Source: Octopus bimaculoides
Lineage: Eukaryota
Assembly (NCBI RefSeq): GCF_001194135.2
Contig: NC_068999.1
Location: 3,993,277 to 4,057,276 of the forward strand
Direction of reading: 5' to 3'
Length of the DNA stretch: 64,000 nucleotides
This document shows positions 9,779 to 25,909 of the stretch, one piece after another. A program made the position numbers and the translations under genes. The first letter of the stretch is position 1. Each line of letters starts with the position of its first letter. The notes under the pieces were generated by a model. That model was given only the letters and a program-made list of their open reading frames with translations. It was not told the DNA's origin and ran no database searches.

Positions 9779-9809
9779 ATGAGCAAAAAGCCGAACTTTT
9801 TCAAAAACG
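9779..9809 (+). CDS. Candidate first coding exon of the anoctamin gene (MSKKPNFFKN + G)
   Basis: ATG at 9779 with A at -3. In-frame upstream TAA at 9722-9724. Ten codons plus 1 nt, then donor CG|GTATGT at 9810. The phase-1 end joins 25814 in frame (G+CA=Ala). No homology evidence for the peptide. Confidence 0.55.
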
Positions 9810-10489
9810 GTATGTTTACTTTCTCCTGTTACGACAGCGACTGACAGTTCTAGCGGTTTTTGGAGGGTGCTCTCACCCTGGTAGTAGTTGATTGAGGGTG
9901 ACCTTTGACTTGTAGGGCGAGAGGTACGAGTTGAGTGACCTCTCAAATTTGTGGCTGGGTTGTTGAGAGTGACTTTTGACTGGTAGGGAAAACGTATTAG
10001 CTGAGGGTACCCTCAAACGGGTTTAAAGTGGGTACTAGTTGATGGATGGTGAATTTACACGAGTATGGAAGAGGTATTAATCGAGGGTGCCCACAAGCTG
10101 GTAGGAAATGGGTACTAATTGAGGGCTGACCACATAGATGGAGGAAGAGATACTGGTCCACTGATGCCGTAAACTGGTTGGGTTGTACAAGTTAAGCGAG
10201 CTTTCTAACAGGGTTGTACTTGTTGAGGGCGACCCTAAACAGGACTGTACTGAGGGTTCGATGGGGTTTCTTTATGTTGTGTTGTTGCTGTTGTTTAACT
10301 TCCAGTGGGTTTTGAATGAACTGATCTAAGTTGAAAGGCATTCCCGCCACGACCATTCCGTCTATAATTTATTCAGACATAGAATCAACAACTACCTCTC
10401 GTGTCCTTCTTTTAAAATGTGATTTATTGTTGTTGTTCTTCTTGTAGTCTGGTATCCCATGATACGTTCCCCGGTATTGTTGTTGTTGT

Positions 10490-10650
10490 TGTTTAACCCT
10501 TGGTCAGCCTATGAAAAGCAGGCGCTCTAACAGTGACCATCCTGTCTTTTTTTCCAGGCAAGGTGAAACCAGGATCATATTATTCATTGTCTTTTTTTTT
10601 TTAAGATGATAGGGTGTGATTTGAGGGAGATTTGGCTGTTATTTCTAGAG
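10490..10650 (+). mobile_element. Dispersed repeat family F (class undetermined)
   Basis: tgtttaacccyaggtcagcc...gaccatcc...gtgtgatttgagggagatttggctgytatttctag. Related pieces at about 2390, 2940, 11070, 17460-17615, 17750-17920 (minus), 18470-18625, 19940, 28620 and 35870. Confidence 0.7.
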
Positions 10651-11600
10651 GGAAAATTCTTCGTTAGTTTGTATCGCCGATGTTGATATCAGAAAGTACT
10701 TGAGTTGTTGTTGTTGCTGTTGTTGTTGTTGCTGTTGTTGTTGTTACTGTTGTTGTTGTTACTGTTGTTTGTCTTTCACTCGTTTTGCGCATTTACTCGG
10801 GAAAACTCTAAAACTCTGCTCACACACTATGCCCCCACACCCCACACGCCTTCTTCCCTATCTTACCCTTTTTATCTTTTAATCTTCTGCCTCCCCTCTA
10901 CCTTCTTCCCCTCCTCTCCTAATTCTCTTACTCCCCTTTCCCCTCTCTGTCTTTTCTTCACCTCTCTCATCTCCCCGCCTCCTTATCTCTCAACCCTCAA
11001 CATTTCTTAAAACGACAATTATCTAAACTCCATTTCCTTTACCAAATCACTATAAGATATGATTTTAAGGAGATTTGGCTGTTATTTCCTGCAGTTTTGT
11101 TGACGATATTAATACTCCTTCGTCACCTAATTGAGTACCAGTAATATACGGAATTAGAATTTAATCGCTTCTGTTCCTTCCACAAAAAAAGTGTGGTTTA
11201 CGTTTAAAATTAGAGAAATTATTATTATTGAGTGAGAGAGCAGGGCATGTTGTCAAGGTGACACTGGGGTACAAATATATGAAGCCCAGTATACCCATCA
11301 TGACTACCCGTCTGATAAGGGTACACCAGGCACATGCATCACAACCATGTGTGCGTGACATGTCTCCACAAAAGAATTATCCAAACCCCAGAGAATTCCT
11401 CTCAGCACATGGCCATGATTGCTCCCCCACTACTTCTGCTCCTGATCAGAGATGCACATATCGTCAGCCACTAAGGGACATGCTCAACTGGTTAAGGTCA
11501 AACACTGGTTAAGGACAAGCAACTCTGTGGTATTAAGCTGGGTATTTGCTGTAGCCCGTCTTTTACTCCAAAACAGAACATGCATTTGACAGCACCTCTA

Positions 11601-11832
11601 TTGGGTTGGTGCATAGTTATTGTGGTTTCAACAAAAACAATAACAATATTCAACAAAAACATCTTTAAATGACAGTCTGACCATCTGCCAAGCAAATGGG
11701 AGGCAGTAATTGAAGTAGATGGTGACTATGCTCCGGAATAATCATTTAAAGATGTTTTTGCTACATGTTGTTATTATTTTTGTTGAATAAAATTTGTTGA
11801 AAAAAAACCGCAATAATTATGCCCCAACTCAA
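11601..11832 (+). mobile_element. mariner-derived MITE retaining the transposase C-terminus (LPSKWEAVIEVDGDYAPE*, 11685-11741)
   Basis: TA|TTGGGTTGGTGCATAGTTATTGTGGTTT ... AAACCGCAATAATTATGCCCCAACTCAA|TA, similar to Hsmar/MADE1-type TIRs. The peptide resembles the mariner C-terminal LPxRWxxVIxxxGxY. Confidence 0.85.
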
Positions 11833-11944
11833 TAATTAGTTAGGATCAGAAGCCATGAGAGTCACTCCTTGATAATGCATCAGAGCAGTTATTATTATTA
11901 CTATTATCATTGCTGCTGCTGCTGCTGCTACTACTACTACTATG

Positions 11945-12200
11945 GTGAGATGTCAGAATCGTTAGAGCATCGGGAAACAACACCTTGTAGTCTTCATTCT
12001 GAGTTCAAATATCGTCGAGGTCAGCTTCTGTCAACCTTTCGGGGTCGATAAAATGCATATCGACTAACCCCCTCCCCCAGAATTGCTGGCCTCGTGCCAA
12101 AATTTGAAACTTGTCTTTAATACTGTCCTTGATATTCTGTTGGGGTCGATTTCCTCTGTCTTCATTTTCGAGGGTCGATAAGATAAGTATTAGGGGTTCG
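11945..12200 (+). mobile_element. SINE family A copy with internal partial duplication
   Basis: ggtgagatgtcagaatcgttag...ctgagttcaaat...ggggtcgataaa; the ggggtcgat module occurs three times. Confidence 0.7.
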
Positions 12201-13139
12201 TCGGACCGAGTAACTTCGCGCCAGCAAAAATGCAACAAAAAAGGAAATATTAGAAACTCACATCTTTTGTGTCGGTTTGTCACTCGCCATTGCAATAACA
12301 ATGAGAGACTCAACCACGGGGCCTCCACATCTGCCTCTCTTCTACCTGACCCTCAACCCATAAACATGGGCGGGGGCTTTGTATGGTCCCTTAACCTGAC
12401 AGAAATCTCCTTGTAATCTCAGCTGTCCTTTCTTTTATTACTTGTTTGGTTTGTTTGAAAAGGCTGAACCCACAGGGTTCACACACACACACACACACNN
12501 NNNNNNNNNNNNNNNNNNNNNNNNNNNNNNNNNNNNNNNNNNNNNNNNNNNNNNNNNNNNNNNNNNNNNNNNNNNNNNNNNNNNNNNNNNNNNNNNNNNN
12601 NNNNNNNNNNNNNNNNNNNNNNNGAAGGGGCAGAGATGCAGAGGGCTGACTTCTTTGAACCGAATGAAATATGGAATGAGACCCGAGTATCTGAACAGCG
12701 GTGGAACGAGACCAGCAAGTTCTAAAGAGCAGAGGCCATTGTAGTAGAGGTAGAAAAGGCAGAGAGAGGAGACATACACGTCTGGGCCTGAGGCGGGGAA
12801 TATTTTGGTGAACATCTTTGTGTAAATGAACTACGCGGAACATGGGAATTTGAAGCAAACTATTTGAGGTTCCTGCATGGAGACCACATTCTTATAGTCA
12901 TGGAGGAGTCAACTCTGGCACAGTCGTCATGGCGGTACAATACCATGTTATAGTTATTTGGTAGGAGTGGTGGTGATACTCGTTTTATGCTCACTCAGAA
13001 TGAGTGTCAAACACAACAAAAGAAGTTAGTGGCTACGAACGAAGATATAAATATTTCTATTGTTATTTTAACACCTAAAATGCTGTTTATGTGAAGATCA
13101 TTCCTTCAGTAAACCGGTTCAATCCAGTGTATGCGTGAC

Positions 13140-25137: not shown

Positions 25138-25237
25138 CATGTCTGTTGCACAGTATATTGTTCCTTTAAGATCCAACTTCTCCAGATCTTACCTACATGT
25201 GTGTTGGCTTTGAATGTGTGTGTTTAAGTGTCTTCTG

Positions 25238-25542
25238 TAGAGGCACACGGCCTAGTGGTTAGAGCAGTCGAGGGATCATGGGTTCGAATCTCAGACCGGG
25301 CAATGTGTGTGTTTATAAGCGAAATACCTAAAGCACCACGTGGCTCCGGCAGAAGGTAATGGCAAACTTCTGCTGACTCTTTCGACGCAACTTTCTCTCC
25401 TTCTTTCCTCCTGCGTCTAGCAGCTCACTTGTGACAGACAGACTGGCGTCCCATCCATGTGGGGAACCTATATGCCAATGAAACCGGGAAACTGGCCCTC
25501 ATGAGCCAGACATGGCTTGAGAAGGAACAAACAACAACAACA
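25238..25542 (+). mobile_element. tRNA-derived SINE with RTE/Bov-A-like segment and (AAC)n tail
   Basis: A-box-like CGGCCTAGTGG (25248), B box GGTTCGAATC (25281), gaaggtaatggcaaac resembling RTE-derived Bov-A sequence, and tail caaacaacaacaac. Confidence 0.75.
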
Positions 25543-25592
25543 CCCAGTAGTGTCTTCTAAGACATAACCAAAAGGGTTTGGGGACAGGAAGA

Positions 25593-25605
25593 ATGTCTTA
25601 CCATA
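25593..25605 (+). CDS. Candidate short alternative first coding exon (MSYH + A)
   Basis: aga-ATG TCT TAC CAT A|GTAAGT. Phase 1, in frame with the acceptor at 25814 through a 208-nt intron. Very short, so chance is not excluded. Confidence 0.3.
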
Positions 25606-25618
25606 GTAAGTGTGTGTG

Positions 25619-25657
<39 letters not shown>

Positions 25658-25813
25658 CATTGGGCTCAGTAATTTTATGACAAAAAAGTGTTTTGCAAAA
25701 TTTTTGGTTAGATGGAGATGGGGTTGACATTTTCAGTTTGATTCTCCCAAACTCTATTGTAATCTATTCGCATTTGATACTGACTGACATTTACTTCACA
25801 TTTGTTGTTTCAG

Positions 25814-25909
25814 CAATCTCTCCAGATAAAGAACCAAACTATCCAGTCATGTATGGTGCTACAACACCACCTTCTGTGCAGGTACCAATTGGTTTTGAAC
25901 AGCTTTCAG
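25814..25909 (+). CDS. Anoctamin N-terminal exon (xISPDKEPNYPVMYGATTPPSVQVPIGFEQLS), phase 1-1
   Basis: Acceptor tttgttgtttcag| and donor AG|GTAAGT. 96 nt, open frame, non-repetitive peptide. The terminal G plus AA at 37861 gives Glu in frame. Confidence 0.75.

What the first reader, a model, noticed from the sequence alone, without database searches (positions are those of the whole stretch)
9779..25909. Anoctamin with up to three alternative phase-1 5' exons feeding one constant acceptor (variable N-terminus)
Seen: 9779-9809 (MSKKPNFFKN|GTATGT), 20577/20668-20697 (...MTIPLFIKC|GTGAGT) and 25593-25605 (MSYH|GTAAGT). Each is an ATG with a purine at -3, an open frame and a near-consensus donor, and all three are in the phase needed to join 25814. 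Known: mammalian TMEM16A and TMEM16B vary their cytosolic N-terminus through alternative promoters or first exons. Inference: this gene may use a multi-promoter variable-first-exon system spread over 16 kb.
Basis: partly seen in the sequence, partly recalled or inferred. Interest (0 to 1): 0.7.

Follow-up and report, generated by a model that had tools for sequence, protein, structure and literature searches.

The report
Octopus anoctamin alternative first exons

Summary
The window holds the 5' part of an Octopus bimaculoides anoctamin (TMEM16) gene on the + strand. Readable coding exons are 9779-9809, 25814-25909, 37861-37931, 50730-50888 and 52959-53086. The second ATG is at 20670, not 20668.

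Candidate A (9779-9809, MSKKPNFFKN) joined to 25814 is exactly the N-terminus of UniProt A0A0L8I5M5. A sister record, A0A0L8I568, joins a different first exon (MEREKLVEN, also phase 1 and ending in G) to the same acceptor. That exon is not in the readable window.

So [quoted passage not shown] is right in kind and already annotated. Candidates B (20577/20670-20697) and C (25593-25605) have no supporting record. They lie in CpG-depleted intron sequence, and equally good arrangements are as frequent on the reverse strand and in the other phases.

The three assembly gaps are all intronic and interrupt no candidate exon. Alternative first exons are already described for mammalian TMEM16A, B and F. 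Verdict: partly supported, ordinary, low interest.

The parts
1..16000 (.). CpG-non-depleted domain around first exon A. It looks like an unmethylated, promoter-type region; the boundaries are approximate.
   Evidence: CpG observed/expected is 0.62-0.95 in 2-kb bins over 1-16 kb (0.44 at 10-12 kb). From 16 kb to 64 kb it is 0.14-0.46 in most bins (finer bins).
9488..9778 (+). Readable sequence upstream of A's ATG, presumed 5' UTR or proximal promoter. It is cut off by gap 8681-9487.
   Evidence: In-frame TAA at 9722-9724 with no in-frame ATG between it and 9779. Four out-of-frame upstream ATGs at 9592-9672. GC is 0.48 in 9501-10000.
9779..9809 (+). First coding exon 'A' (exon 1b): MSKKPNFFKN plus G, phase 1, donor GTATGT.
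   Evidence: Identical to residues 1-10 of UniProt A0A0L8I5M5 (P0002), including the junction codon G|CA = Ala.
9810..25813 (+). Intron 1 of the A isoform. It contains gaps 12499-12623, 13321-13839 and 15965-16748, dispersed repeats, and candidates B and C.
   Evidence: No Pfam domain in its longer ORFs on either strand.
20577..20697 (+). Candidate B (ATG 20577, 20649 or 20670; donor A|GTGAGT). Unsupported and judged a chance look-alike. Positions 20668-20697 could also be read as a 30-nt frame-preserving cassette.
   Evidence: Donor score 6.5, with 38 equal or better GT sites in the intron. No Pfam hit. No protein record carries it joined to exon 2. Local CpG o/e 0.39. Cassette reading.
25593..25605 (+). 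Candidate C (MSYH plus A, donor GTAAGT at the head of a (GT)n microsatellite). Unsupported and judged a chance look-alike.
   Evidence: Four codons only. Donor score 6.1. CpG o/e 0.10 in 25501-26000. No protein record.
25814..25909 (+). Constant exon 2: (A/T)ISPDKEPNYPVMYGATTPPSVQVPIGFEQLS, entered and left in phase 1.
   Evidence: Present in both UniProt isoforms. Acceptor tttgttgtttcag, donor CAG|GTAAGT with score 12.95.
37861..37931 (+). Exon 3: EQQAGKEQQNGHNMEPTSNDESEE.
50730..50888 (+). Exon 4: start of the anoctamin dimerisation domain (KSLNSLYFDDQKRQIDFVLAF...LEYATK).
   Evidence: Pfam PF16178. PDB anoctamin-6 alignment. tblastn of 14 homologues.
52959..53086 (+). Exon 5: KNDINVPKSCFDKLYSPFKLDSDIVKEEDNYFTAPFNQERLK(Q). 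It is not in the truncated UniProt models.
   Evidence: Continues the frame from exon 4. Aligns to the FTAPF motif of anoctamin-6 and of transcript L001.

Best explanation
The window carries the 5' end of an Octopus bimaculoides anoctamin (TMEM16) gene that is transcribed from at least two promoters. Each promoter supplies its own 5' UTR and a tiny first coding exon of 9-10 codons plus one G. Each first exon has a donor site, so the two are mutually exclusive, and both splice in phase 1 to the single acceptor at 25814.

One first exon is 9779-9809 (MSKKPNFFKN). It sits at the downstream edge of a CpG-non-depleted, promoter-like domain. The other (MEREKLVEN) lies outside the readable window, most likely more than 9.8 kb further upstream.

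The two proteins differ only in the first 9-10 residues of the cytosolic N-terminus, one basic and one acidic. The main consequence is therefore probably differential transcriptional and translational control rather than a different channel or scramblase.

Candidates B and C are ordinary intronic ATG...GT coincidences.

Shown: the exon coordinates, the two protein records, and the chance statistics. Inferred: separate promoters, the position of the second first exon, and the functional consequence.
For: - P0002 (UniProt A0A0L8I5M5) begins MSKKPNFFKNA-ISPDKEP. P0001 (A0A0L8I568) begins MEREKLVENA-ISPDKEP. They are otherwise identical.
- P0002 maps to 9779-9814, 25801-25908, 37857-37931 and 50727-50891.
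- Both isoforms have Ala (G|CA) at the junction, so both first exons end in G at phase 1.
- The MEREKLVEN coding sequence is absent from both strands of the window, even when split by an intron.
- CpG o/e is high at 1-16 kb and depleted downstream.
- An in-frame stop lies upstream of ATG 9779.
- Anoctamin identity: Pfam PF16178 at E 5.5e-14; PDB anoctamin-6 is the best match.
- B and C are at chance level and no record carries them.
- The JGI pipeline adds extra isoforms from PASA transcript alignments. This is described for the sister squid annotation in PMC9068888.
- Alternative starting exons are known for TMEM16A, B and F (PMC8835819; PMC10327929).
Against: - No RNA reads could be examined here. 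The two isoforms rest on deposited gene models whose evidence I could not inspect.
- Both models are truncated. They read through the exon 4 donor to V plus stop, which shows imperfect modelling at this gap-rich locus.
- The second first exon could not be located, so I cannot confirm that it lies upstream on the same scaffold.
- The protein libraries held no octopod orthologues, so conservation of any first exon is untested.
Confidence: 0.75

Rival explanations
1. One reading: A, B and C are all genuine alternative first exons, each with its own promoter. With the annotated MEREKLVEN exon this would make a four-or-more-member variable-first-exon system.
For: All three have an ATG with a purine at -3, an open frame, phase 1 and a GT donor whose intron side fits GTRAGT or GTATGT. 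Real donors of this gene can be weak, e.g. exon 4 GTATAA at score 3.4, so donor strength alone does not exclude B or C.
Against: The same criteria are met as often on the reverse strand (14 versus 11) and in phases 0 and 2. 38-44 intronic GT sites score as well. There is no protein record with B or C joined to exon 2. Both lie in CpG-depleted sequence. C is four codons abutting a microsatellite. The candidate exons share no similarity with each other.
Confidence: 0.05
2. There is a single real first exon. Only one of the two annotated starts (A or MEREKLVEN) is used in vivo, and the other is an annotation artefact such as a chimeric transcript assembly, a mis-scaffolded piece or a predicted exon.
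For: Both UniProt models are visibly imperfect, being truncated by read-through into the intron after exon 4. The locus is riddled with gaps. The MEREKLVEN exon cannot be found in 64 kb.
Against: Two models at one locus that differ only in the first exon are the typical product of transcript-based isoform addition (PASA step). Both join precisely at the same acceptor in the same phase and with the same junction codon, which a random artefact would rarely do. A also has a promoter-like CpG context.
Confidence: 0.15
3. B is not a first exon but a 30-nt frame-preserving cassette exon (20668-20697). It would be optionally inserted between the first exon and exon 2, replacing the junction Ala with DMTIPLFIKCT.
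For: An acceptor-like tttttgtctttcag lies immediately before 20668, with donor GTGAGT after 20697. The length is 30 nt with no stop in the required frame.
Against: No record contains this peptide. The pyrimidine tract is weaker than at the four real acceptors (0.65 versus 0.76-0.82). There is no homology to the N-terminus of homologue L001. Such short AG...GT units are common in AT-rich introns.
Confidence: 0.04

Closest known systems
Mouse/human TMEM16B (ANO2) isoforms A and B, from alternative starting exons 1a(+2) versus 1b
   Same: Same protein family. Mutually exclusive starting exons give cytosolic N-termini of different sequence on an otherwise common body, and their use is tissue-specific: olfactory epithelium versus brain and retina (PMC10327929; PMC8835819).
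   Different: In ANO2 the alternative N-termini differ substantially in length. Here they differ by only 9-10 residues. Tissue specificity in octopus is untested, and orthology to ANO2 is not shown; the best PDB match is ANO6.
Mammalian TMEM16F (ANO6) variant V2, with an alternative starting exon
   Same: ANO6 is the closest solved relative of the N-terminal domain encoded here. [quoted passage not shown]
   Different: The match is weak (E about 2e-4) and covers the dimerisation-domain start only. The transmembrane part of the octopus gene lies outside the window, so subfamily assignment is open.
TMEM16A (ANO1) segment a, under an alternative promoter
   Same: Alternative promoter use alters the cytosolic N-terminus of an anoctamin (PMC8835819).
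   Different: Segment a is a large N-terminal region whose absence changes the protein markedly. Here only about 10 residues change.
Clustered variable-first-exon arrays (vertebrate protocadherin alpha/gamma, UGT1A)
   Same: Several first exons, each with its own promoter, are spliced to shared downstream exons.
   Different: Those arrays consist of many paralogous large exons that encode whole domains. Here there are two supported exons of 9-10 codons with no mutual similarity. PMC9068888 states that cephalopods do not use this mechanism for protocadherins.

Membership tests
Anoctamin / TMEM16 gene | N-terminal cytosolic Anoct_dimer domain (PF16178) above Pfam's cut-off | tested here: met
   53 bits against a cut-off of 22, E 5.5e-14, on the spliced exon 1-5 translation. 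PDB anoctamin-6 hits.
Anoctamin / TMEM16 gene | Ten-helix transmembrane Anoctamin domain (PF04547) with Ca2+-binding acidic residues | not testable with these tools
   No further exon was found between 53087 and 64000. The rest of the gene lies beyond the window.
Gene with alternative first exons (alternative promoters) | Two or more mutually exclusive first exons, each with its own ATG and donor, joined to one common acceptor in the same phase | tested here: met
   UniProt A0A0L8I5M5 (MSKKPNFFKN-A-ISPD...) and A0A0L8I568 (MEREKLVEN-A-ISPD...). This is met for A and the off-window exon only, not for B or C.
Gene with alternative first exons (alternative promoters) | Junctions observed in RNA (RNA-seq, Iso-Seq or RACE) | not testable with these tools
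   No octopus read or transcript collection is available here. The look-up of encoding contigs found neither model.
Gene with alternative first exons (alternative promoters) | A separate promoter or transcription start upstream of each first exon | tested here: inconclusive
   A lies at the edge of a CpG-non-depleted domain, but gap 8681-9487 hides its upstream sequence. B and C lie in CpG-depleted sequence. There are no CAGE data.
Gene with alternative first exons (alternative promoters) | Candidates B and C exceed the background rate of ATG / open frame / phase-1 / donor coincidences | tested here: not met
   11 on the + strand versus 14 on the reverse strand; 8 and 10 in the other phases; simulations 5.5 +/- 2.8.
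Clustered variable-first-exon array (protocadherin / UGT1A type) | Tandem array of paralogous variable exons, each encoding a substantial domain | tested here: not met
   The candidate exons are 4-40 codons long and show no similarity to each other or to anything else in the window. No Pfam domain.

The most novel reading that the evidence does not exclude
At least one of B or C, or the 30-nt unit 20668-20697 used as a cassette, is used in some tissue. With the two annotated starts, this octopus anoctamin would then have three or more alternative N-terminal exons spread over more than 25 kb. That would be a richer N-terminal diversification than is described for any anoctamin.
Probability: 0.07. 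Interest if true: 0.35.

Novelty: already known. Interest (0 to 1): 0.15.

Why it matters
It matters little beyond annotation. The result confirms that an invertebrate anoctamin uses alternative starting exons, as mammalian TMEM16A, B and F do. This hints that promoter choice at the N-terminus is an old or recurrent habit of the family.

The practical value is in correcting the locus:
- The public models are truncated after exon 4.
- Exon 5 (52959-53086) belongs to the same gene.
- One exon is probably lost in gap 51764-52359.
- The second annotated first exon lies outside this window.

Tried and rejected
- Searched for the MEREKLVEN exon by peptide search, by degenerate back-translation with every possible intron split, and by 15-nt sub-patterns without splice signals. 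The only near match is MEREKPVG on the minus strand at 22933-22910, in GA-rich low complexity. I rejected it because it is on the wrong strand.
- The look-up of encoding contigs for P0001 and P0002 found neither on record, so flanking scaffold sequence could not be fetched.
- Looked for octopod orthologues to test conservation of the first exons. The word-index search returned only the O. bimaculoides cluster. The exhaustive HMMER search returned distant homologues that match mainly exon 4. The one hit covering exon 2 (P0003, Logan ERR1719483) has an unrelated N-terminus (MNPIGFEMINAQ...).
- Asked whether B or C sit in repeat families. They do not; there is only a local duplication at 20108-20413 just upstream of B.
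- Looked for nested genes or RNA genes in the intron. No Pfam domain in eight longer ORFs, no Rfam family and no tRNA.
- The Albertin 2015 genome paper could not be read. How the 2015 isoforms were built is therefore inferred from the JGI pipeline as described in PMC9068888.
- The donor weight matrix is a generic metazoan one written from memory, not trained on octopus. I used it only for relative ranking and for strand and phase controls.
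Full report
**Observation**

- A: ATG 9779, MSKKPNFFKN, one extra G at 9809, then GTATGT.
It reads MTIPLFIKC, one extra A at 20697, then GTGAGT. An in-frame ATG at 20577 gives a 40-codon version.
- C: ATG 25593, MSYH, one extra A at 25605, then GTAAGT, which runs directly into a (GT)n microsatellite.

All three have a purine at -3 and are phase 1. The acceptor tttgttgtttcag|C at 25814 opens a 96-nt exon that ends CAG|GTAAGT at 25909.

**Assembly gaps**

The three flagged gaps (12499-12623, 13321-13839, 15965-16748) all lie between 9809 and 20577, inside the intron. 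No reading frame has to cross them; only the distances are uncertain. B, C and exon 2 are on one uninterrupted contig (16749-26876). A fourth gap (8681-9487) starts 292 nt upstream of A's ATG and hides part of its upstream region.

**What the gene is**

A search with the exon 2 and exon 4 peptides returned one cluster of two Octopus bimaculoides UniProt records, both named "Anoctamin dimerisation domain-containing protein".

- A0A0L8I5M5 (P0002, 120 aa) begins MSKKPNFFKNA-ISPDKEPNYP... This is candidate A joined to 25814, with the junction codon G|CA = Ala.
- A0A0L8I568 (P0001, 119 aa) begins MEREKLVENA-ISPDKEPNYP... and is otherwise identical.

tblastn places P0002 at 9779-9814, 25801-25908, 37857-37931 and 50727-50891. 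Reading the splice sites gives these exons:

| Exon | Coordinates |
|---|---|
| 1b (A) | 9779-9809 |
| 2 | 25814-25909 |
| 3 | 37861-37931 |
| 4 | 50730-50888 |
| 5 | 52959-53086 |

Exon 5 is not in the UniProt models but continues the frame. The spliced translation hits Pfam Anoct_dimer (PF16178) at E 5.5e-14. Its best solved relatives are anoctamin-6/TMEM16F chains.

Both UniProt models end ...LEYATK-V-stop. That is a read-through of the exon 4 donor GTATAA, so they are truncated. A homologous transcript (L001, Logan ERR1719483) aligns to exons 2 (weakly), 4 and 5. It also carries a segment between exons 4 and 5 (YVKVHAPWEVL...) that is missing from the window. The corresponding exon probably lies in gap 51764-52359, which would explain the truncation.

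**The second annotated first exon**

MEREKLVEN is not encoded anywhere in the readable window on either strand. I tested it as a whole, split by an intron at any position, and as any 15-nt sub-pattern. The only resemblance is MEREKPVG on the minus strand at 22933-22910, in GA-rich low complexity, which I dismiss.

A gene model cannot place an exon in unread sequence. The exon must therefore lie outside the window, most plausibly more than 9.8 kb upstream of A. This is an inference.

**Are B and C more than chance?**

I scored every ATG / open frame / phase-1 / GT combination in 9488-25813 with a generic donor weight matrix.

| Test (purine at -3, donor score >= 6) | Count |
|---|---|
| + strand, phase 1 (includes A, the three ATGs of B, and C) | 11 |
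| Reverse complement of the same interval | 14 |
| + strand, phase 0 | 8 |
| + strand, phase 2 | 10 |
| First-order Markov simulations | 5.5 +/- 2.8 |

The reverse strand gives five ATG/donor combinations.

In the intron, 38-44 GT sites score at least as well as the donors of B and C. The gene's real donors range from 3.4 to 12.95, so donor quality does not discriminate here.

- B and C lie in CpG-depleted sequence, with o/e 0.39 and 0.10.
- A lies at the edge of a domain (1-16 kb) with o/e 0.62-0.95, against 0.14-0.46 over most of the rest of the window.
- No protein in the 5.8-billion-sequence library carries exon 2 behind any other N-terminus.
- The B ORF has no Pfam domain.
- Neither B nor C is part of a repeat family in the window.
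- The intron holds no recognisable nested gene, Rfam family or tRNA.

**Mechanism**

Shown: two deposited isoforms share every exon from 25814 on and differ only in a 9-10-codon first exon that ends in G at phase 1.

Inferred: each first exon has its own promoter, and the two are mutually exclusive because each first exon offers only a donor site to the common acceptor.

The peptides differ in charge: MSKKPNFFKN is basic and MEREKLVEN is acidic. They make up only the extreme tip of the cytosolic N-terminus. I therefore think the main effect is differential transcriptional and translational control, not a change in channel or scramblase properties.

A review notes that basic N-terminal residues of TMEM16F interact with PIP2 (PMC8835819). 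That makes a small functional difference conceivable, but it is untested.

**Comparison with what is known**

Alternative starting exons or promoters are described for three mammalian anoctamins:
- TMEM16A: segment a is under an alternative promoter.
- TMEM16B: isoforms A and B, from exons 1a/2 versus 1b, with tissue-specific use.
- TMEM16F: variant V2.

These come from PMC8835819 and PMC10327929.

The octopus case is the same kind of arrangement with a much smaller variable part, and both isoforms are already in UniProt. It is not a protocadherin/UGT1A-type variable-exon array. There are only two supported exons, they are tiny, and they are unrelated in sequence. PMC9068888 notes that cephalopods do not use that mechanism for protocadherins.

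That paper also describes the JGI pipeline step that adds isoforms from PASA transcript alignments. It describes this for the squid annotation, and I assume, but could not verify, that the 2015 octopus models were made likewise (searches failed).

**Verdict**

- The idea of alternative phase-1 first exons feeding the acceptor at 25814 is correct and already annotated.
- Candidate A is real by that annotation.
- B and C are best explained as chance.

No RNA evidence or octopod orthologue could be examined with these tools, so a residual 5-7% remains that B or C is used. Interest is low.

Noticed in passing
window 50889-52958 (gap 51764-52359): Homologue L001 carries a segment between the exon 4 and exon 5 equivalents (YVKVHAPWEVLTRHAEIMNLKMP...) that has no counterpart in the readable window. 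An exon is probably hidden in this gap. Both UniProt models stop here by reading through the donor GTATAA (V plus stop at 50889-50894).
   Followed up: partly
window 20668-20697: A 30-nt unit with an acceptor-like tttttgtctttcag before it and GTGAGT after it. It would keep the reading frame if inserted between the first exon and exon 2, giving ...KN-DMTIPLFIKCT-ISPD... There is no evidence that it is used.
   Followed up: partly
window 1-16000 versus 16001-64000: CpG observed/expected steps from about 0.6-0.95 down to about 0.15-0.45 near 16 kb. This is consistent with an unmethylated promoter-side domain and a methylated gene body.
   Followed up: partly
window 19357-19763, 31504-31850, 40459-40775, 41050-41290, 48340-48704, 57175-57324, 61501-61756: Copies of a dispersed SINE-like repeat, 70-90% identical and in both orientations, fill the introns. 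A second family occurs at 171-341, 26648-26876 and 51138-51490.
   Followed up: no
window 44214-44757: A 273-bp unit is duplicated in tandem at 98% identity. Minisatellites lie at 53136-53452 (21-bp unit), 54083-54436 (19-bp unit) and 62260-62427 (32-bp unit, 99% matches).
   Followed up: no
window 22910-22933, minus strand: ATGGAGAGAGAAAAACCTGTAGGG encodes MEREKPVG, which resembles the annotated alternative start MEREKLVEN. It is on the wrong strand and in GA-rich low complexity, so I judged it coincidental.
   Followed up: yes
L001 82-483 and 425-2872: This 3.3-kb Logan contig (run ERR1719483) carries an anoctamin homologue split into two overlapping ORFs of 133 and 815 aa. That suggests a frameshift or a retained intron in the assembly. 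Its N-terminus (MNPIGFEMINAQ...) repeats the PIGFE motif seen in exon 2.
   Followed up: no
window 9690-9704: An acceptor-like cttcacttccag|C lies about 75 nt upstream of A's ATG. Exon 'A' could therefore be preceded by an upstream non-coding exon rather than being the transcription start exon itself.
   Followed up: no
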